A stretch of DNA of 64,000 nt from Perkinsus chesapeaki ATCC PRA-425 (lineage: Eukaryota > Protista > Perkinsozoa): NCBI GenBank assembly GCA_013115145.1, contig JAAPAO010000131.1:1-64000 (forward strand). Direction: 5' to 3'. Positions 1-11,900 of this stretch are shown piece by piece; position 1 is the first letter of the stretch, and each line of letters opens with the position of its first letter. The notes under the pieces are model-generated. The model ran no database searches and was not told where the DNA came from. It saw only the letters and a list, made by a program, of their open reading frames with translations. The position numbers and the translations under genes were made by a program.

Positions 1-3000
1 CTGGCTCCTGGAACAAGAAGTGATCTTCGCGCATCTGATGTTCTTCCGCGGCTGTCATTCCGCCAGGTTTCTCGGGATAGCTGTCGGATCCGGCAAGTGG
101 ATAATAATCTCCGGCAAGTTCACCAGTCAATGCCTTTAAAGCCTTGGTGAGTACTCGCTCTACCTCGCGCCTCTCATCCTTCGTGCATGAAGGAGGAAGC
201 CTAATGCCTCTAACACTCCTTCCTGTCCTAACTCTAGTGGATATGACATACTTCTCAGTTGGATCAATTGCAGTGTCAAGGAGTTTGCTGTAATCCAAAT
301 CAGTCGGATGTTTGGCATCTGGTGGGTATCCACCGTGGCGCTGGTCGATGACTGGGTCGAAGAGCTCCTTGAAGACCTCGTAACATTCTTCATCACCCGC
401 AACCATTCCGACCGTTTTGATCATTGGATGTCCCTTATTATCCATACCGGTCTTGATACATTTCGCGAGGCCAACTCCATTTGGTGTCTTCTTATCCTTC
501 AAGTTAGCATAGATCTCTGGATTGGCTTTGAGGACATCAGCCATAACACTGTGGTGTTCAGACAGATCAGGCATCTCAGCCGGACATTCATCATGTGGGA
601 ATCCCGGGAATTCGTCGTCGCCTAATCCAGGCATGCTGGAGTAGTCTGCGTGTGCTGGCGTGGAACTCGAGCCGCCTCCAACAAGAGCTTCAAACGCAGC
701 CGCGTCTTCTTTTTGTAGAGCTTGCTCCATCTGGACGATCTTCGAGCATCCCGATATCATAATGTTGACAAGCTCAACTTCAGACTTGCCGATCCTATCA
801 CTGTTTGAAATATCCCAGATACCACCAACACTTGCACTATCCACACCAGCACCGCCGCGAGCTTGCAAATGGAGAGATTTGCAGATGTCCTTGAAATCAG
901 GCCTGGCCGACAGCAGAGGGACCTTCACCATAACTGATGCTCGGAGACCTGTGCCAAGGTTACTCGGACAAGTCAGGACATAACCAAGATGATCATTATG
1001 CATGAAGTCGTAGCCTTCCTGTTTCACCACTTCTTGGACCTTGTTCACTGCCTCGCAGAAGCGAGTGAAGACAGCCTTGATATCAGCGGCCTTCTGCATA
1101 GATATTATTCGCATGTGGTCCTCCTCATTAACCCATACTAGGAAGTTCTTCTGCTCGTTAGCGAATATGCCACGAGCATCGGGCCAGTGTCGGCCCATAC
1201 CAGAGGACAACAATAGAGTTGAGTCTGGCTCCTGGAACAAGAAGTGATCTTCGCGCATCTGATGTTCTTCCGCGGCTGTCATTCCGCCAGGTTTCTCAGG
1301 ATAGCTGTCGGATCCGGCAAGTGGATAATAATCTCCGGCAAGTTCACCACCTAGTGCCTTAAGTGCCTTTGTGAGGACTCTCTCAACCTCTCGCCTCTCC
1401 TCCTTTGTGCACGAAGGAGGAAGTCTAATGCCCCGGACGCTCCTGCCAGTGCGAACTCTGGTAGAAATTACGAACTCACCAGATGGGTCAATCGGGGTGT
1501 CGAGGAGTTTGGTGTAATCCAAGTCGGTTGGATGCTTGGCATCTGGTGGGTACCCACCATGTCGTTGATCGATGACCGGGTCGAAGAGCTCCTTGAAGAC
1601 TTCATAACTTTCTTCATCACCAGCCACCATTCCGACCGTCTTGATCATTGGATGCCCCTTATTGTCCATACCTGTCTTGATGCACTTCGCGAGGCTCACT
1701 CCATTGGGCGTCTTCTTATCTTTAAGGTTCTCATAGACTTCGGGGTGAGCTTTCAGGACATCGGCCATAACACTGTGATGTTCCGACAGATCAGGTATTC
1801 CAGCTGGGCATTCGTCGTGAGGGAACCCTGGGAATTCATCAGCTCCAAGACCAGGCATACTGGAATAATCCATAGTATTCGGAGCAGCAGCGCTACCACT
1901 GCTTCCCCTAAGGGATTCGAAAGCGGCCAGATCAGCACTCTCCAAAGCTTGCTCCATCTGGACTATCTTCGAGCATCCCGATATCATAATGTTGACAAGT
2001 TCAACTTCGGACTTGCCGATCCTATCACTGTTTGAAATATCCCAGATACCACCAACACTTGCACTATCCACACCAGCACCGCCGCGAGCTTGCAAATGGA
2101 GAGATTTGCAGATGTCTTTAAAATCAGGCCTGGCCGACAGCAGAGGGACCTTCACCATAACTGATGCTCGGAGACCTGTGCCAAGGTTACTCGGACAAGT
2201 CAGGACATAACCAAGATGATCATTATGCATGAAGTCGTAGCCTTCCTGTTTCACCACTTCTTGGACCTTGTTCACTGCCTCACAGAAGCGAGTGAAGACA
2301 GCCTTGATATCAGCGCCCTTCTGCATAGATATTATTCGCATGTGGTCCTCCTCATTAACCCATACGAGGAAGTTCTTCTGCTCGTTAGCGAATATGCCAC
2401 GAGCATCGGGCCAGTGCCGGCCCATGCCAGAGGACAACAGCAACGTCGAGTCTGGCTCCTGGAACAAGAAGTGATCTTCGCGCATCTGATGTTCTTCCGC
2501 CGCTGTCATTCCGCCAGGTTTCTCGGGATAGCTCTCGGATCCTGCAAGTGGATAATAATCTCCGGCGAGTTCACCAGTCAATGCCTTTAGAGCCTTGGTG
2601 AGTACTCGCTCTACTTCGCGCCTCTCATCCTTCGTGCATGAAGGAGGAAGTCGAATGCCTCTAACACTCCTTCCTGTCCTAACTCTAGTGGATATTACAT
2701 ACTTCTCAGTTGGATCAATTGCAGTGTCAAGGAGTTTGCTGTAATCCAAATCAGTCGGATGTTTGGCATCTGGTGGGTATCCACCGTGGCGCTGGTCGAT
2801 GACTGGGTCGAAGAGCTCCTTGAAGACCTCGTAACATTCTTCATCACCCGCAACCATTCCGACCGTTTTGATCATTGGATGTCCCTTATTATCCATACCG
2901 GTCTTGATACATTTCGCGAGGCCAACTCCATTTGGTGTCTTCTTATCCTTCAAGTTAGCATAGATCTCTGGATTGGCTTTGAGGACATCAGCCATAACAC

Positions 3001-5527
3001 TGTGGTGTTCAGACAGATCAGGCATCTCAGCCGGACATTCATCATGTGGGAATCCTGGGAATTCGTCGTCGCCTAATCCAGGCATGCTGGAGTAGTCTGC
3101 GTGTGCTGGCGTGGAACTCGAGCCGCCTCCAACAAGAGCTTCAAACGCAGCCGCGTCTTCTTTTTGTAGAGCTTGCTCCATCTGGACGATCTTCGAGCAT
3201 CCCGATATCATAATGTTGACAAGCTCAACTTCAGACTTGCCGATCCTATCACTGTTTGAAATATCCCAGATACCACCAACACTTGCACTATCCACACCAG
3301 CACCGCCGCGAGCTTGCAAATGGAGAGATTTGCAGATGTCTTTGAAATCAGGCCTGGCCGACAGCAGAGGGACCTTCACCATAACTGATGCTCGGAGACC
3401 TGTGCCAAGGTTACTCGGACAAGTCAGGACATAACCAAGATGATCATTATGCATGAAGTCGTAGCCTTCCTGTTTCACCACTTCTTGGACCTTGTTCACT
3501 GCCTCGCAGAAGCGAGTGAAGACAGCCTTGATATCAGCACCCTTCTGCATAGATATTATTCGCATGTGGTCCTCCTCATTAACCCATACGAGGAAGTTCT
3601 TCTGCTCGTTAGCGAATATGCCACGAGCATCGGGCCAGTGTCGGCCCATGCCAGAGGACAACAGCAACGTCGAGTCTGGCTCCTGGAACAAGAAGTGATC
3701 TTCGCGCATCTGATGTTCTTCCGCGGCTGTCATTCCGCCAGGTTTCTCGGGATAGCTGTCGGATCCGGCAAGTGGATAATAATCTCCGGCAAGTTCACCA
3801 CCTAGTGCCTTAAGTGCCTTTGTGAGGACTCTCTCAACCTCTCGCCTCTCCTCCTTTGTGCACGAAGGAGGAAGTCTAATGCCCCGGACGCTCCTGCCAG
3901 TGCGAACTCTGGTAGAAATTACGAACTCACCAGATGGGTCAATCGGGGTGTCGAGGAGTTTGGTGTAATCCAAGTCGGTTGGATGCTTGGCATCTGGTGG
4001 GTACCCGCCATGTCGTTGATCGATGACCGGGTCGAAGAGCTCCTTGAAGACTTCATAACTTTCTTCATCACCAGCGACCATCCCGACCGTCTTGATCATT
4101 GGATGCCCCTTATTGTCCATACCGGTCTTGATGCACTTCGCGAGGCTCACTCCATTGGGCGTCTTCTTATCTTTCAGGTTCTCATAGACTTCGGGGTGAG
4201 CTTTCAGGACGTCGGCCATAACACTGTGATGTTCCGACAGATCAGGTATTCCAGCTGGGCATTCGTCATAAGGGAACCCTGGGAATTCGTCATCTCCAAG
4301 ACCAGGCATACTGGAGTAATCCATAGTAGTCGGAGCAGCAGCGCTACCACTGCTTCCCCTAAGGGATTCGAAAGCGGCCAGATCACCACTCTCCAAAGCT
4401 TGCTCCATCTGGACTATCTTCGAGCATCCCGATATCATGATGTTGACAAGTTCAACTTCGGACTTGCCGATCCTATCACTGTTTGAAATATCCCAGATAC
4501 CACCAACACTTGCACTATCCACACCAGCACCGCCGCGAGCTTGCAAATGGAGAGATTTGCAGATGTCTTTAAAATCAGGCCTGGCCGACAGCAGAGGGAC
4601 CTTTACCATAACTGATGCTCGGAGACCTGTGCCAAGGTTACTCGGACAAGTCAGGACATAACCAAGATGATCATTATGCATGAAGTCGTAGCCTTCCTGT
4701 TTCACCACTTCTTGGACCTTGTTCACTGCCTCACAGAAGCGAGTGAAGACAGCCTTGATATCAGCACCCTTCTGCATAGATATTATTCGCATGTGGTCCT
4801 CCTCATTAACCCATACGAGGAAGTTCTTCTGCTCGTTAGCGAATATGCCACGAGCATCGGGCCAGTGCCGGCCCATGCCAGAGGACAACAGCAACGTCGA
4901 GTCTGGCTCCTGGAACAAGAAGTGATCTTCGCGCATCTGATGTTCTTCCGCCGCTGTCATTCCGCCAGGTTTCTCGGGATAGCTCTCGGATCCTGCAAGT
5001 GGATAATAATCTCCGGCGAGTTCACCAGTCAATGCCTTTAGAGCCTTGGTGAGTACTCGCTCTACTTCGCGCCTCTCATCCTTCGTGCATGAAGGAGGAA
5101 GTCGAATGCCTCTAACACTCCTTCCTGTCCTAACTCTGGTGGATATGACATACTTCTCAGTTGGATCAATTGCAGTGTCAAGGAGTTTGCTGTAATCCAA
5201 ATCAGTCGGATGTTTGGCATCTGGTGGGTATCCACCGTGACGCTGGTCGATGACTGGGTCGAAGAGCTCCTTGAAGACCTCGTAACATTCTTCATCACCC
5301 GCAACCATCCCGACTGTTTTGATCATTGGATGTCCCTTATTATCCATACCGGTCTTGATACATTTCGCGAGGCCAACTCCATTTGGTGTCTTCTTATCCT
5401 TCAAGTTAGCATAGATCTCTGGATTGGATTTGAGGACATCAGCCATAACACTGTGGTGATCAGACAGACCAGGCATCTCACCCGGGCATTCATCATGTGG
5501 GAATCCTGGGAATTCGTCGTCGCCTAA
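1..5527. repeat. Coding tandem repeat with alternating 1224/1227-bp units (higher-order period 2451 bp)
   Basis: The anchor ctggctcctggaacaagaag recurs at 1, 1225, 2452, 3676 and 4903. Spacings are 1224, 1227, 1224 and 1227, all multiples of 3. Confidence 0.97.
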
Positions 5528-6780
5528 TCCGGGCTGTGACGTGTATGCTGTTTCTTCTGCGGGGGTTGCCTCCTTCGCAGCGGAAGGTGCTTCCGCTGTG
5601 GGTTCGCTCTTAGATGGTTCATCTTGTGTACGACTAGCAGATGAGGTATCTAGAAAATCGCGTGCTGTTCAGTTCTTTTACTGTTATTGGCCATGTATCA
5701 AGAAGTGCGTACTTACTCCTCTTTTGGATATACTCTGCCATGAATGACAGAGGATCCGCAGGACGGTCCGTGAGGAGCTGCTGTACCATCCCCTGTAAGA
5801 GCAGTTGGACTTGAAAATCGTCAAGGTACTTCTTAGCGTTTAAAGCTGCCTGATGTCGCGTTTGGCGTTGGGATTTCCTGATGACAGATGTCTGGTCTCG
5901 ATTAACAGTCAGGGGTGTGACAAAATAGTGCCATGGCGGAGTTTATCTCCGTCGCTCGATGACGTCGAGCAGTAAATTACCGATGTCAGGGTTTATAGGC
6001 CAAAACGGAGCGCAAATCTATAAAATTGTCAAAGCCGGGAACGGTACCGTTCCTGACCCACTTCAATTCATTTCCGCCGTCCGTCGACGGCGTCCTCTAC
6101 CAATTGACTCGATTCGGCATCACTTATGCCGTAACAGGATAGCACAAGTAACCAGTGAGGAGACTGAGTTTCGACAAGGTAAGAATATGGCGATAAAGCA
6201 AGTCACCACAATGAGGCTCCTCGGTGTAATTTTATCTATCCACACCGAACGAGCAAGCTGTGGCTGGGCAAAATCACGCGAAGACGCATTTCTCACTTTT
6301 GTTTGACTTGAGGATCTGTATGCTTGAACGTAAGAGATATCTCGATGCTCGGTCCACCGTCTGGGTTCTCCATGGCGATGGATTCCGACTGCTCGCCAAG
6401 GTCTTTGAAATGGTGGAGCGATACTTGTCGACTGCCGACCTGAAGCAGTCGAGCTATCCATACGCAGCATTGTGATCAAATAAGCGAATGCGCTTGGAAT
6501 CCCCTGTGAGCATCGATGAAGGAGCAAAAGGCATGGAGGGATAAGGGGCTGTCTTGGAGAGAAAACGAGAAGGCTCCTACCTGAGTGAACAGGTCGACCT
6601 TGCAAGATTCCTGAGAGTCGGAGGGGAATCGGAAAGGCTCGTTCAAGCGCAGCGGAGCTTGGCGTCTGGTCTCTCCAACTCGGATAGACAGATAGGCTTT
6701 TTCTGAGATAAAGACTGTTTACGATGCAAGGCAGTGGTCTTACCTGGGACATTAGAGGCATCGGTGACGGTGATATCCAT
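1..6780 (-). CDS. Multi-domain phosphagen kinase (ATP:guanido phosphotransferase, creatine-kinase-like) polyprotein with N-terminal beta-rich module and Dpy-30/RIIa-like D/D motif; 3' end runs off the window
   Basis: Manual exon model with consistent phases: 6780-6744, 6702-6581, 6439-6297, 5877-5717, 5649-<1, all introns GT-AG. Repeated domains carry [51 protein letters not shown] and [15 protein letters not shown]. Both linker types were translated without stops. About 2037 aa lie within the window. Confidence 0.93.
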
Positions 6781-7335
6781 GGCTGCTGTCCAGTGGTGCT
6801 ACCTGGGAAAGTAGGTGGACAAGCAAGTGGACGAAAGCGTGTTCGAAAGAACTGAAAGAAAGGCAACAATCACGAAAAGCAGTGAATGAATTTGGGCGGT
6901 AAGCAAGATGTCATAGAGAGGGAAGAGAAAGAGGATGTACGACTACTGGAAGGCACCAAAGGAGATTTCCGGAGACTTCATTTGAATTCTGCGCTGATTA
7001 CGCGCACGCCATTGTAATCGATTTGACGGAGTAGAACAACACAGTTCGCAATGACGTCGAGCAGTATGACGAATGGTTAGTGACCCGCACTATGGTAGAG
7101 TGAGTGCCTTATAGCACTAATAACACCCGGGCATCTTGTTACCTATCTTACAGTGGCATTGGAACAGCTTAGACCCCAAAAGCTTTGGATTTACAATTGC
7201 TGCCGTGTTACATGTCACTATGCCATTGTCACTGTGGTGAGCGGTACCTGGAGAAAGGTTATTTTCAATGGGATTCACGGAGGGATGGAAGGGGCTTCTT
7301 GCACTGTAAATGTGGCTTAGAACTTTTTTACTGTA

Positions 7336-10240
7336 ATGGCTAGCAGCGTCCCCGCAATGAACGGATTCGGGGACTCGGCCTTCAGCTACGATCCAGCTGC
7401 CGCACCACAACTACCCCCTACAGGATCACAACAACAGCAACAACCAGCAACTCAATCTCCATTCCATACCGCTTCTCCGCCAACTCAGAAGGATGGTACC
7501 GCAAATGTAATACTGTGGGCGTCGATACCGAAAATAAATTTTCCTCGTCTTCGTTGGTGACAGGCTCTCGGTTTTGGAGCGCCTGGCAGTGCTGCCATTC
7601 CCGCTGTGTCTGGCAGTGGTGCGGCCTCCGCTGCTCCGGGCAGTGAGAGGGTGAATGATAGCATCTATATTGATTTTGATATTCTCGGGGATGGCAAAAC
7701 AGACCCAAATGAGTAGGAAGACTGCGTTGGGGACACTTGAAGAATCCCTCGCTTGCAGGTTGATGAAAACGCTCAAGGAGCAGCTGTCGAATCCCGAAGC
7801 ACCTATACGTAGGAACGCCTCTGTCTGGGCTTGTGGGGACATTAGTATTGGTAGATAACGGAATGTTTGGGGTGTTCGCGGACAAAGCTCAGCTGGAGGA
7901 TGCTCCCGCTGCTTCCACCAAGGCCGCTGCGCCGGCTGGAAGTGTGACCGGCAACGGTAGTGAGCAATGTGCGGCGATGACGGATCATTATTTAACCATA
8001 GATAATACTGGAGCGAATGACCAGCTTGCGTTGGAGCGTCATTTGGCTGAGCTAGAACTGAACGATGCCAAGGCCCAGCTCGAGGATCTAAAGAAGCAGT
8101 TGTCCGATTCGGGTAGGTGATGACATGCTCTATGTACCGTACCGCTCACGATCAGTATCGGCGCATCAGTCCTCTCTGACGCAGCTGGCAGATGCCAGGA
8201 ATAAACTGGACGATTCAATGGGCCAAGTGGCCAAGCTCGAGGTGCTGTCGGTTCATCGCTGGGAGGATGCTTACACTGTTTTTAGGGTGAACTTAACAGG
8301 GTTAAATCACAGAATAAGACACTTACAACTGACCTTAGTAACGCTAAGGATATGTGGATGAAAGTAGTGCCTAGTGGGACGGGGCATGGGAACGAACGAC
8401 TGCTGCTGTCAGGAATCGAGCCGTGCCTCGAAGCTCCAGGACGAGCTGAACACCAGGGACGATCAAATAGCGGAAGACTCGCGGAGAATGGCGGAGATGT
8501 CGGCAACCAATGAGGTACTGCGGCGGTGGTGGTCTCGACCGGGCCACATGTGGTGGGCAGGCGCTGCAACGTGAAAACGCCCAACTGAAGAAGCTCTTCG
8601 AAGGCTCAGAGCAGGAGGTGGCAGCCCGAGCGAGGGCGGCTGAGAATAGTTTTGGACAGCAAAACGAAAGGTGCTCGACCCGTGGGGGAATTCATACCGA
8701 CTTTTTCTTTGTTAGCTATTTTGGTGGCGCGCGAACAGTACCATCAACATCTAGAGTTCCAGCGGCGATGGCGTCGAGCCTCGGAGAGATGGTGGCTCCA
8801 CCTCAGACTGATGGGTACATGAGACCGCCTACCACCGCAACAACCACTGCATTCACTCCAACGCCTACAGCTCGACTAGGTCAGGGGGATATGGATGTCG
8901 CATGTGATTTGGGTACTTCAGGTGGCACCAGCGGCTCCCCGATGAAGACCACTACCTTCCAGCCTCCCACTACGGGTACTGTCGGTGGCGGTGCTCTCCT
9001 TCCACACAATGTTGGATCACCTGCGACTGTCGAGCGATTCCGGGCTCTTATTGGCGCTCAGGAAGGGGTGCTGTATGAGGATGATATACTACAGGTGATG
9101 ATGCCATACCCCCGGGAGATCTGAGGGAAGTTTGGTATTCAGATTGGAGTACAATCCTCCTACACGTGCGGTATGGGTGAAGGGCAGGTCTCCTTGTACT
9201 TCGGCAACAAGAGTAAGAAGCATCGCTGTGCAACCGCTCGGTAGGGCGCCTCAGGTTCCGGAGCATTGGACGGCTTCGCGGTAGAGCTAATCTCGGGGGA
9301 TGATATCACCCTCACTGCGGAGGAAGCGGTCCCGACGGCTATAAGGGCGAAACAGCAGGTAATGGTGTAGCTAGAGGTGTCAGTGAACTTCCTAGCTTAT
9401 TGTGTAGATACGTCTGTCAATGAAGGTTGTCTGTACTAAACCAACCCAGCAGATTCCTATGATGAGTGTGAGTCATTCTCATGGCTGCTGGCATCGTCCA
9501 CATTACAATCAAATCAGATGCGATTCCTTCTGTTCGATAACACCCCGCGGACCCTATCGCTTCGGTTGCCCATTCTCCTATCCAAGTTTATGACCCCTGT
9601 GGACATCCCTAATGCCGGTGATTTCTTCAGCCTCTGGCGACATCACACGTGAAGAAGCACCTTAGGCAACCAATCTCCTCAGCATCCTTCAGATACCATC
9701 TTTCGGAGCAATCAGCTGTAGTAAGCATCACAGCTTCCTTCGGCTGCAGGGATAGTCTTCTGGCCTTGGCCCGATCCGCCACGTTGGGAGGGGTAATAGT
9801 TCGGCGCGAGGAGGGTTAGGTGGCAAACTTTTTTGTGAAGGTGTTGAAGCTCCATTCCCAGTTGGATGCGAATCCTAACAACCTAGTTTTATGCGGCAAG
9901 TTCCCAGCAGATAGTCCAGAGGGAATACAGTGCTTCACTCTTCCCAATGCAACAGTAGGCCTCAGTGGGGATGATGAAGGTTATGGCTGCCTTCAGGTCC
10001 TAGTGCGGATCGAGGTCGGTACTGGCCCCCAGCATAGCGGCAAGGCCAGAGTTGCGGTAACAGTACCTTAAAAAATCTGAGTCGCCGATACCTGTTTCCC
10101 TTCAGGTCCGGTCGTCCGAGCCCGTTGTTGCGCTGGCTGTAAGAGACGACCTTCTGCTAGCGTTTGCCGAACTACCCGCTGATGCAGAGCCAAGCGACCC
10201 CAACTTTGAGTCTGGTGCCACGGCGGACAGTCGATAGGCT
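7336..10240 (+). CDS. Low-complexity/coiled-coil protein with C-terminal alpha-adaptin appendage (ear) domain, multi-exon
   Basis: Spliced translation FRALIGAQEGVLYEDDILQ|IGVQSSY...GQVSLYFGNKS, then LPILLSKFMTP and LDANPNNLV, resembles AP-2 alpha ear Ig and platform subdomains. The N-terminal part is Ala/Gln/Pro-rich plus heptad-like sequence (LERHLAELELNDAKAQLEDLKKQL). End is approximate. Confidence 0.7.
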
Positions 10241-10492
10241 ACTGTTGCTGCTTCCGGTGGTGATGAGTACTATGCAGGTAGTGGCTCGACCCCTGCCGTT
10301 GCCGACCGTTGTTTCTACTCTGTTCGATTACTAGTGATACCAACATTACCTCTGAGGAGCCCATTCATTGCTTTAATGCCGATCGGAATGGTTCTAGTGA
10401 AAGCGTCGTTATAACTGCTACCGTCCCTTCCACAAATTTCCGTGTAAGATCGTCTTGGGCATTCGTCCAGCTTCTCCATTAATATCTCACTT

Positions 10493-11897
10493 TTGTTGCG
10501 TTGTCCAGTCTGTCTACGGTTCCCTATAGTAATGCAACAAGGACTGCCGTTTAGCGGGCGCGCTCTCACGGCTGTCGGCGCTTCGAGGAGACTATCGGCA
10601 TGTTGCGCCAAGCAGGTGTCGAAGGCAGTCAGTGATAAGTTCGGCAGACGGCACACGTACCTCAGGCTGTCATTAACTGACAAGTGTAATCTGCGGTGCC
10701 AGTACTGTATGCCGCCCGCCGTCTACGGTAGTGAGCCGGAGGAAATCAGGTAACAACGAGAAGAGCTTCTTCTCCCTCTTCTGAAGAGGGTTGACGAAGG
10801 AAAAGGTTCTGGATGTCAGGCCACCGCCATCGGAGTATCTTACTGCGGATGAGATAGTCTCCTTGGCATCTACTTTTGTTAACGACTTGGGCATCACTAA
10901 AATACGTTTGACGGGAGGCGAGCCCACGGTAATATGAAGGCCTTAGCCACCTCTGATTGAGGGAAATGTCGGTATGGATGAAATGGCTACAACGGGAACC
11001 CCACACTGTGGAATTCAGTAGACCGCAACTTCCTCGACGGAAAAGCCCAGCTCGCTATTTAGTTGCGTTAACTAGTAATCTTCCAAAGCTCAGATACGAT
11101 CGGATTTTCCTCGCATCGTCGAAGGTATCGCCGAGAGTTGTCGGCCTCACTTAGACCAGTTTGGCATTACCACCAACGGCGTCCTGCTCGCCCGTCATCT
11201 GCCGGTGATGCGGTCGGCAGGCCTGCTCCATGTGAACGTATCTTTGGATACATTAGTGTCGGCGAAGTTCCCGATGATATCCAACAGACCCGAAGCCTAT
11301 TGGGAGAGAGCTCGGCGGTTGATAGACACTTTGCGGAGAGATGAAGACTTCCGTCTGAAAGTGAACTGTGTGGTCATGCGCGGCGTTAACGACGACGAGC
11401 TGTTGGACTTTGTTGAGCTCACGAGGGAGGAAAATCTCAACTTGCGGTTCATCGAGTACATGCCCTTTTCCGGCAACAACTGGGGCTCCGGCAAGTTGAT
11501 GCTATCCAAGCTTGAAATCCTGAATCGAATTCAGGATGCTGTTGGTGCTGATCGGCTCAGTGCAGTAGAGGAGGTCCATCCTAATTCTACAGTCGGTAAA
11601 GAGTACCGTGTTGAGGGATATAAGGGTACCTTCGGCGTTATCAGCTCCATGACGGACAAGTTCTGCGGCGGCTGCAATCGCCTGCGAGTCTCGGCGGATG
11701 GTTCCCTTTATAATTGCTTATTCTCATCTTCTGACTCTGGTTTGTCATTAAGAGATGCCCTAAGGGCAGGCAAGCCTCTCCGGCCCATCCTAGAGGAGTC
11801 TCTGTCCAATAAGGCCTGGGCTTTGGGAGGCCGAGCCGATATGCACGAGTTGGGCAGCAGCTCGAAGGAACTACGGAATATGATGAGCATTGGTGGT

Positions 11898-11900
<3 letters not shown>
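10493..11900 (+). CDS. moaA: GTP 3',8-cyclase (molybdenum cofactor biosynthesis protein A, radical SAM)
   Basis: [27 protein letters not shown] (CX3CX2C), [24 protein letters not shown]...NCLF (second Fe-S motif) and the C-terminal MMSIGG double-glycine. N-terminal extension resembles a mitochondrial transit peptide. Confidence 0.95.

What the first reader, a model, noticed from the sequence alone, without database searches (positions are those of the whole stretch)
1..5649. Giant in-frame phosphagen-kinase polyprotein (at least 4.5 domains, still open at the window edge) absent from the ORF track
Seen: one reading frame carries four complete and one partial ATP:guanido phosphotransferase domains (approx. 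5520-4380, 4290-3170, 3070-1930, 1840-720, 620-<1), joined by stop-free Gly/Ser/Ala linkers of about 30 aa. The NEED and CPSNLGTG catalytic motifs appear intact in each complete unit. Established: contiguous two-domain arginine/taurocyamine kinases and the three-domain sea-urchin flagellar creatine kinase exist. Inference: five or more fused catalytic domains is an unusually large ATP-buffering or energy-shuttle enzyme for a protist parasite.
Basis: partly seen in the sequence, partly recalled or inferred. Interest (0 to 1): 0.85.

Follow-up and report, generated by a model that had tools for sequence, protein, structure and literature searches.

The report
Five-domain anchored creatine kinase gene
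The clam and oyster parasite Perkinsus chesapeaki has a real gene that strings about five working creatine kinase enzymes behind a docking module. The design already sits, uncharacterised, in databases for sister species, so this is a new member of a known kind and not a new system.

Summary
One minus-strand frame (window 5668..2, 1889 codons, no stop) carries four complete creatine-kinase (CK) units and one cut unit, all with intact catalytic motifs.

- **Locus:** the window is Perkinsus chesapeaki contig JAAPAO010000131.1, and window position 1 is the contig end.
- **Gene model:** five exons. Exons 1-3 encode a C2-like beta-sandwich, exon 4 a Dpy-30 docking motif, and exon 5 the CK array.
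- **Array structure:** units alternate as types A-B-A-B-A. Same-type copies are about 98.5% identical in DNA. Differences between units are mostly synonymous (omega 0.03-0.15).
- **Copy number:** assembler word depth in three DNA runs matches the assembly. It indicates exactly one more catalytic segment beyond the contig end, so about five domains (~2,220 aa).
- **Public annotation:** GenBank model KAF4671673.1 wrongly splices out every catalytic domain.
- **Not unique:** the P. olseni orthologue (KAF4694947.1) has six domains, P. marinus two, Amoebophrya three and dinoflagellates three or four. Animal predictions reach six to eight.
- **Function:** an anchored, probably flagellar, ATP-regenerating enzyme. 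This is inferred. No RNA evidence was found.

The scan's other notes cover this same DNA in an overlapping window. Verdict: new member of a known kind, moderate interest.

The parts
6744..6780 (-). Exon 1 (start ATG at 6780); beginning of the C2-like module
   Evidence: GT-AG model built by homology to Amoebophrya P0132. The spliced N-terminus is identical to GenBank KAF4671673.1 (P0243). The record's gene starts at 6780.
6581..6702 (-). Exon 2; C2-like beta-sandwich
   Evidence: The AF2 model has pLDDT 86.5 and eight strands at residues 2-92. Foldseek top hits are all C2 domains.
6297..6439 (-). Exon 3; end of the C2-like module
5717..5877 (-). Exon 4; Dpy-30/RIIa-type docking and dimerisation motif
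   Evidence: Pfam PF05186 scores 30.2 bits against a cut-off of 22; RIIa is a weaker hit. The motif is conserved in 3-4-domain myzozoan homologues.
2..5649 (-). Exon 5: linker plus the CK array, open at the contig end
   Evidence: Open frame; acceptor at 5650/5649; window position 1 is record position 1 of JAAPAO010000131.1.
4307..5533 (-). CK unit U0 (type A), complete
3083..4306 (-). CK unit U1 (type B), complete
1856..3082 (-). CK unit U2 (type A), complete
632..1855 (-). CK unit U3 (type B), complete
2..631 (-). CK unit U4 (type A at its N-terminal end, turning B-like near the cut); 210 codons, truncated by the contig end
   Evidence: Depth indicates that its missing catalytic half exists in the reads.
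4454..4993 (-). Homogenised catalytic tract (unit nt 541-1080; the same tract recurs in U1-U3), 96.7-98.7% identical between A and B against 81-82% in the N-terminal half
   Evidence: Difference profile per 90 nt and identity ranges. Interpreted as a gene-conversion tract.

Best explanation
This is one real five-exon gene of Perkinsus chesapeaki (contig JAAPAO010000131.1, complement 6780..<1). It encodes an N-terminal C2-like beta-sandwich, a Dpy-30 docking and dimerisation motif, and a tandem array of creatine-kinase domains on one polypeptide. Four domains are complete in the window. The fifth is cut by the contig end and, by read depth, is the last one, giving about 2,220 aa and 244 kDa. 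The array grew by tandem duplication of a two-domain A-B block. It is kept uniform by gene conversion and by purifying selection, so every domain is expected to catalyse ATP + creatine <-> ADP + phosphocreatine. The single Dpy-30 motif most likely docks (inferred) the whole array onto an amphipathic helix of an anchoring protein such as radial-spoke RSP3 in the zoospore flagellum. There, several catalytic sites per docking site would regenerate ATP for dynein from phosphocreatine, as the three-domain flagellar CK of sea-urchin sperm does. Shown here: the gene structure, intact motifs, selection, copy number and conserved architecture. Inferred: enzyme activity, that the protein stays unprocessed, and flagellar location.
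For: - **Gene and motifs:** open frame and domain count; all catalytic and creatine-type motifs in each unit. Per-domain PDB matches are best to creatine kinases (E about 1e-130), against about 1e-77 for single-domain arginine kinases.
- **Exon model:** all introns are GT-AG, and the N-terminus is identical to the GenBank protein.
- **Docking and C2-like modules:** Dpy-30 lies above the Pfam cut-off; C2-like fold.
- **Selection:** dN/dS is 0.09 between A and B and 0.03-0.15 between same-type copies. Most differences are synonymous: 11:6, 18:3 and 9:1.
- **Copy number:** assembler word depth in three DNA runs from two studies equals the window's 31-mer multiplicity for the A-type N-terminal halves (3 copies) and the A-to-B linkers (2 variants at 1x each). 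It is 4.0 against 3.1 for the shared catalytic tract, meaning one more copy outside the window.
- **Orthologues with the same layout:** syntenic genes in P. marinus (2 domains, natural stop) and P. olseni (6 domains, complete, no gaps). Amoebophrya A120 has three domains, and dinoflagellate or metagenomic proteins have 3-4, all with the same N-terminal cassette.
- **Literature:** DPY-30-domain proteins bind the RSP3 amphipathic helix, and ciliary kinases that balance ATP associate with radial spokes (PMC12399478). A creatine kinase gene is up-regulated in free-swimming Amoebophrya dinospores (PMC6176090). Perkinsus CKs have been characterised as creatine kinases (Fraga, Ellington and Suzuki 2022, cited in PMC9678886; that paper was not readable here).
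Against: - No RNA run was listed that holds the stretch, and nothing from the one RNA run laid matched. Transcription, splicing and stage specificity are therefore unshown.
- Only short-read contigs were available. Their depth is a rough proxy, and no single molecule spans the array.
- The 3' end and stop codon are not in the assembly.
- Flagellar docking rests on analogy alone. Dpy-30 motifs also occur in nuclear and other complexes, and a C2-like module could point to a membrane instead.
- The position of the adenine-stacking His of arginine kinases is Met in all units (alignment). P. marinus and Amoebophrya CK sequences share this.
- A source of creatine in Perkinsus is unknown.
Confidence: 0.6

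Rival explanations
1. Membrane- or cortex-anchored ATP buffer that is not flagellar. The C2-like module, not the Dpy-30 motif, sets the location, and the array serves trophozoite processes such as ion pumping, vacuole function or division.
For: The first ~95 residues fold like a C2 domain. The cultures that were sequenced are mostly non-flagellated stages, yet the gene is under strong purifying selection. Dpy-30 motifs are not restricted to axonemes (general knowledge).
Against: Pfam's C2 model is not matched, and calcium- or lipid-binding residues were not examined. The C2-like plus Dpy-30 cassette is conserved across flagellated myzozoans. A CK is up-regulated in swimming Amoebophrya dinospores. 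No RNA run was listed as holding the gene, which fits stage-restricted expression but does not prove it.
Confidence: 0.22
2. True polyprotein. The array is translated once and then cleaved in the linkers into monomeric creatine kinases, as dinoflagellates do with several plastid polyproteins.
For: The units are separated by flexible 28-29-aa Gly/Ser/Ala linkers. Perkinsus CKs are reported as monomeric (title of Fraga et al. 2022). Relatives of Perkinsus use polyproteins (general knowledge).
Against: Only one docking cassette exists per polypeptide, which makes sense only if the array stays intact. Characterised two- and three-domain phosphagen kinases are unprocessed (PDB 4RF6 and 4WO8; sea-urchin flagellar CK from general knowledge). 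Linker sequence differs between species and between A and B types, with no conserved cleavage motif.
Confidence: 0.1
3. Assembly artefact. A one- or two-domain gene was inflated by mis-assembly of reads or haplotypes at a contig end.
For: The array sits at a contig end. The P. marinus Sanger assembly shows only two domains.
Against: Same-type copies differ at 17-21 sites, mostly synonymous. Copy-specific variants appear at 1x, 2x and 3x depth in three runs from two studies, exactly as the assembly predicts, and the shared tract is at about 4-5x the single-copy flank. The flank shows no allelic variants. The P. olseni orthologue has six units inside a 255-kb contig without gaps.
Confidence: 0.03

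Closest known systems
Perkinsus olseni 'Creatine kinase S-type, mitochondrial' KAF4694947.1 (UniRef100_A0A7J6PG89), 2648 aa
   Same: Syntenic orthologue with the same exon layout and the same C2-like plus Dpy-30 N-terminus. The CK domains lie in one long exon with all motifs intact.
   Different: It has six domains that are 98.5-100% identical in DNA, instead of about five of two diverged types. It is complete, with a natural C-terminus. Units group by species, so the arrays expanded or were homogenised independently. It is a database prediction only, and the name 'mitochondrial' comes from a BLAST hit.
Perkinsus marinus creatine kinases (XP_002775402.1, two-domain; single-domain P0043; Fraga, Ellington and Suzuki 2022, Comp Biochem Physiol B 262:110758)
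   Same: Orthologous locus with conserved upstream genes; 92% amino-acid identity; the same N-terminal exons lie upstream.
   Different: Only two domains as assembled. The annotated model starts inside the Dpy-30 exon. I could not read the 2022 paper, so I do not know whether it treats the multi-domain gene.
Sea-urchin sperm flagellar creatine kinase and 'creatine kinase, flagellar-like' proteins of animals (three contiguous domains)
   Same: Several complete CK domains on one polypeptide, about 50-53% identity. The proposed role is ATP regeneration along a flagellum.
   Different: They have three domains and no C2-like or Dpy-30 cassette. Anchoring in sea urchin is by N-myristoylation (general knowledge), whereas this protein starts MDIT with no Gly2. 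In the quick tree the animal domains form a separate clade.
Two-domain arginine kinase of Anthopleura japonicus (PDB 4RF6) and two-domain taurocyamine kinase (4WO8)
   Same: Solved examples of contiguous phosphagen kinase domains; they are the best whole-chain PDB scores. Cooperativity between domains has been proposed (PMC12467219).
   Different: Different substrates, with a guanidino-specificity loop four residues shorter in the alignment. They have two domains and no docking module.
Dpy-30-domain flagellar proteins (RSP2; adenylate kinase 7)
   Same: A Dpy-30 motif, alone (RSP2) or joined to a nucleotide-metabolising enzyme (adenylate kinase 7, general knowledge), docks on the RSP3 amphipathic helix (PMC12399478).
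   Different: The enzyme is different, there is a single catalytic unit, and the motif's position differs. Binding by the Perkinsus motif is untested.

Membership tests
Phosphagen (ATP:guanidino) kinase family | N-terminal helical domain (PF02807) followed by the catalytic domain (PF00217) | tested here: met
   5 x PF02807 and 4 x PF00217, with whole-protein E-values of 1e-131 and 1e-268.
Phosphagen (ATP:guanidino) kinase family | Active-site Cys motif (CPSNLGTG), the acidic NEED motif and the phosphate-binding arginines | tested here: met
   All motifs occur once in each complete unit. Residue roles come from general knowledge of CK structures.
Creatine kinase subgroup | Full-length guanidino-specificity loop and creatine-pocket residues (Ile in HP.I..VG, Val-Asp in GVD) | tested here: met
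   HPMIKTVG and GVDS are present in all units. The loop is four residues longer than in the arginine kinase aligned. Single-domain PDB matches are best to CKs.
Creatine kinase subgroup | Creatine-specific phosphotransfer activity | not testable with these tools
   Needs a recombinant enzyme assay. Activity is reported for P. marinus CKs in a paper I could not read.
Contiguous multi-domain phosphagen kinases | Two or more complete kinase domains in one uninterrupted reading frame of one gene | tested here: met
   Four complete domains and one cut domain in a 1889-codon frame. Copy number is supported by read depth.
Contiguous multi-domain phosphagen kinases | Translated and retained as one polypeptide | not testable with these tools
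   No RNA or protein data; no RNA run was listed that holds the stretch.
Sea-urchin-type flagellar CK | N-terminal myristoylation signal (Gly2) for membrane anchoring | tested here: not met
   The N-terminus is MDITV. Anchoring, if any, is by another means.
Dpy-30/RIIa docking-domain proteins | Dpy-30 motif above the curated threshold | tested here: met
   PF05186 at 30.2 bits against a cut-off of 22. A three-helix segment is predicted at pLDDT 90-97.
Dpy-30/RIIa docking-domain proteins | Dimerises and binds an amphipathic helix of an anchoring protein | not testable with these tools
   Needs a pull-down or a co-structure.
C2 domains | Eight-stranded beta-sandwich with C2 topology; sequence-family match | tested here: inconclusive
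   Foldseek hits are exclusively C2 domains, but at E 1e-5 to 1e-3 and TM 0.4-0.55. There is no Pfam C2 hit, and the module is shorter than typical C2 domains.
Processed polyproteins of dinoflagellate type | Conserved cleavage sites between units and mature single-unit products | tested here: inconclusive
   Linkers differ between unit types and species, and I recognised no shared motif. Products were not observable.

The most novel reading that the evidence does not exclude
C2-like + Dpy-30 + (CK)n is a previously undescribed enzyme class conserved across Myzozoa. It is docked to the axoneme and forms the terminal of a phosphocreatine shuttle. Its number of catalytic domains per docking site changes quickly between sister species (2, about 5 and 6 in three Perkinsus species; 3-4 in syndinians and dinoflagellates) through block duplication and gene conversion. 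This would be a natural way to tune enzyme dosage at a fixed number of anchoring sites.
Probability: 0.35. Interest if true: 0.6.

Novelty: new member of a known kind. Interest (0 to 1): 0.4.

Why it matters
Creatine kinases were long regarded as animal enzymes, and their presence in alveolates has only recently been addressed. This locus and its orthologues show three things:
- Perkinsids, syndinians and dinoflagellates share an anchored, multi-domain CK.
- The domain number is evolutionarily labile.
- The public gene model for P. chesapeaki is wrong in a way that hides all catalytic domains.

If the Dpy-30 motif docks the array in zoospore flagella, this would be a protist counterpart of the sperm phosphocreatine shuttle, built with a different anchor. 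It would also be testable, because P. marinus can be transfected. It does not define a new kind of system.

Tried and rejected
- **Tandem Repeats Finder** found nothing because the period exceeds its 500-nt limit. The repeat finder gave the periods.
- **Homology searches:** the three length-windowed searches did not show the six-domain P. olseni protein. It is clustered at 90% identity under an 878-aa P. marinus representative, and only listing of cluster members revealed it.
- **Key paper:** the paper on Perkinsus CKs (PubMed 35598705) is not held.
- **RNA:** the two RNA runs with the same species label hold none of the sampled words, and no contig of the one laid (X6) matched. There is therefore no splice or expression evidence.
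- **Read laying scope:** I laid only window 4200-7300 (one unit plus the unique flank) and not the whole array, because the tool turns away stretches with long repeats.
- **Tree:** the careful domain tree did not finish, so only the quick tree and FastTree DNA trees were used, descriptively.
- **Rejected readings:** pseudogene or decaying repeat (no stops, omega well below 1); mitochondrial CK as in the GenBank name (the N-terminus is a folded C2-like module, not a presequence); allelic variants mis-joined in tandem (the flank has no variants, and the copy-specific depths are 1x, 2x and 3x).
Full report
**Observation.**
The minus strand of window 5668..2 is a single open frame of 1889 codons. 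Pfam finds four ATP-gua_Ptrans catalytic domains and five ATP-gua_PtransN domains in it. Splitting at the recurring PGLG.DEFPGF motif gives five units:
- U0 5533-4307
- U1 4306-3083
- U2 3082-1856
- U3 1855-632
- U4 631-2, which holds 210 of about 409 codons

Repeat spacing is 1227/1224 nt, so the true period is a two-unit block of 2451 nt. The types run A-B-A-B-A. Linkers of 28-29 residues rich in Gly/Ser/Ala join the units. Every complete unit keeps [13 protein letters not shown], the arginine-bearing motifs and the creatine-type loop HPMIKTVG. The ORF list omits the frame only because it runs off the source.

**Where it is.**
A homology search with a two-unit query returned 'Creatine kinase S-type, mitochondrial, partial [Perkinsus chesapeaki]' (P0243, KAF4671673.1). 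It lies on contig JAAPAO010000131.1 of GCA_013115145.1, which is 66,793 nt long. The first 9780 bases of the window are identical to that record's positions 1-9780. Window position 1 is therefore a contig end, and the assembly breaks inside the array.

**Gene model.**
The long frame has no start codon; it begins at an intron acceptor. Guided by the Amoebophrya A120 protein P0132, I built a five-exon model with only GT-AG introns: exon 1 6780-6744, exon 2 6702-6581, exon 3 6439-6297, exon 4 5877-5717 and exon 5 5649-2.
- Its spliced N-terminus is identical to the GenBank protein.
- Exon 4 is a Dpy-30 motif: 30.2 bits against a cut-off of 22, with a weaker RIIa hit.
- An AlphaFold model of residues 1-160, built with 21 homologues (pLDDT 86.5), shows an eight-stranded sandwich followed by three helices.
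- Foldseek matches the sandwich only to C2 domains, at modest scores.

The GenBank model then removes all four catalytic domains as 'introns'. That leaves five N-domains and no PF00217. The 5.6-kb open frame, the selection data and the orthologues show that this is an annotation error.

**Are the copies real?**
Same-type units differ at 17-21 of about 1225 nt, and A differs from B by about 13%. The differences are mainly synonymous:
- A against B: dS 0.53-0.63, omega about 0.09.
- Same-type pairs: dS 0.04-0.07, omega 0.03-0.15, with synonymous to non-synonymous counts of 11:6, 18:3 and 9:1.

This pattern fits diverging functional copies, not sequencing error.

Three DNA runs from two studies hold the locus. 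I laid their contigs on one unit plus the unique flank.
- The flank is a single contig with no variants, at depth 90.2, 11.3 and about 115.
- For the A-type N-terminal half and the A-to-B linker, depth relative to the flank equals the 31-mer multiplicity of the assembly. Examples are 2.17 against 2.0, 2.38 against 2.51, 0.86 against 1.0 and 1.08 against 1.0.
- The variant letters are exactly those of U2 and U4.
- The two linker variants each sit at 1x, so there is no third A-type linker.
- In the catalytic tract that A and B share, the ratio is about 4.0 against 3.1 expected from the window. One further copy therefore exists, which would be the missing half of U4.

The gene thus most likely has five domains, about 2,220 aa and 244 kDa. 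These are assembler word depths from short-read contigs, so the figure is an estimate. No molecule spans the array.

**Evolution of the array.**
Within a unit, the first 540 nt differ by 18-19% between A and B, while nt 541-1080 differ by only 1.3-3.3%. That indicates a gene-conversion tract over the catalytic core. U4 switches from A-like to B-like letters just before the contig end.

The P. marinus orthologue is colinear over the upstream 14 kb. It has the same exons and two domains followed by a stop, with no gap in the gene. The P. olseni orthologue (KAF4694947.1) has six domains in a 2585-codon frame inside a 255-kb contig, all motifs intact and a natural C-terminus.

In DNA trees the units group by species. 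The quick protein tree shows the same for Amoebophrya, whereas Symbiodinium-type four-domain proteins show positional orthology. Domain number in Perkinsus is therefore labile: 2, about 5 and 6. The Sanger-era P. marinus assembly may under-count.

**Wider family.**
The C2-like plus Dpy-30 cassette precedes three CK domains in Amoebophrya A120. It precedes three or four in many dinoflagellate or metagenomic proteins, including one from Symbiodinium natans. Among the 120 best long relatives, 75 have three domains, 31 four, 9 five, 1 six (the sponge Dysidea) and 1 seven or more (the nemertean Tubulanus). In the quick tree, a five-domain protein from an unnamed source groups with animal flagellar CKs.

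[quoted passage not shown] I found no paper describing a five- or six-domain CK, or a CK with a Dpy-30 motif. Perkinsus CKs were characterised by Fraga, Ellington and Suzuki (2022), cited in PMC9678886, but that paper is not held.

**Mechanism.**
Shown here: each unit has the residues needed for catalysis and for creatine specificity, and has been kept by selection. Per-domain PDB matches are best to CKs.

Inferred:
- The protein stays intact, since there is one docking cassette per array.
- The Dpy-30 motif docks it on an amphipathic helix, as DPY-30 proteins do on radial-spoke RSP3. Ciliary kinases that balance ATP also associate with spokes (PMC12399478).
- A CK gene is up-regulated in free-swimming Amoebophrya dinospores (PMC6176090).

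I therefore favour an anchored flagellar ATP-regenerating array in zoospores, analogous to the sea-urchin three-domain flagellar CK but with a different anchor, because the N-terminus has no myristoylation glycine.

Rivals are a membrane or cortical role through the C2-like module, cleavage into monomers, and assembly artefact. The depth data make the last very unlikely. No RNA evidence could be obtained.

**Verdict.**
The feature is a new, mis-annotated member of a known kind. A complete six-domain orthologue has been in GenBank for a sister species, uncharacterised. The earlier notes of this scan on the cassette and on creatine specificity concern this same DNA in an overlapping window, and my tests agree with them. 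Interest is moderate. The value lies in the conserved anchored architecture, the labile domain number and the corrected gene model.

Noticed in passing
window 124-6780 (-): GenBank model KAF4671673.1 for this gene splices out all four catalytic domains as introns. That leaves a 935-aa product with five N-domains and no PF00217, so the record needs re-annotation.
   Followed up: yes
L002 6001-14382 (P. olseni JABANP010000026.1): The complete orthologue has six nearly identical CK domains. Its unit lengths run 412/414/412/414/413, reflecting a variable His run in the linker, so growth was in two-unit blocks as in P. chesapeaki.
   Followed up: partly
window units U0-U3, motif LRASVMVK: The position that holds the adenine-stacking histidine in arginine kinases (aligned as ...RASVHVK... 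in PDB 4RF6) is methionine in every unit. The same is true in the P. marinus and Amoebophrya CK sequences. The effect on nucleotide binding is unknown.
   Followed up: partly
window about 7300-11900 (+ strand gene models; L003 1-2445, L002 683-5584): In P. chesapeaki and P. olseni one called gene product carries Alpha_adaptinC2 together with Radical_SAM and Mob_synth_C. In P. marinus these are two separate genes (683 aa and 331 aa). This is probably a merged gene model and not a real fusion.
   Followed up: no
window 5552-7300: No alternative letters were seen in the single-copy flank in any of three DNA runs, so this locus looks homozygous in the sequenced cultures even though Perkinsus is reported to be polyploid.
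   Followed up: no
P0294 (P. marinus XP_002771601.1, 806 aa): A second two-domain CK protein of P. marinus lies on another scaffold and falls in the same 90% cluster. It could be a second locus or a haplotype copy of the orthologue.
   Followed up: no
P0229 / P0207 (Macrobrachium nipponense): Animal proteins combine ankyrin repeats, four phosphagen-kinase domains and a C-terminal Dpy-30 motif. Pairing Dpy-30 with multi-domain phosphagen kinases may therefore have arisen more than once.
   Followed up: no
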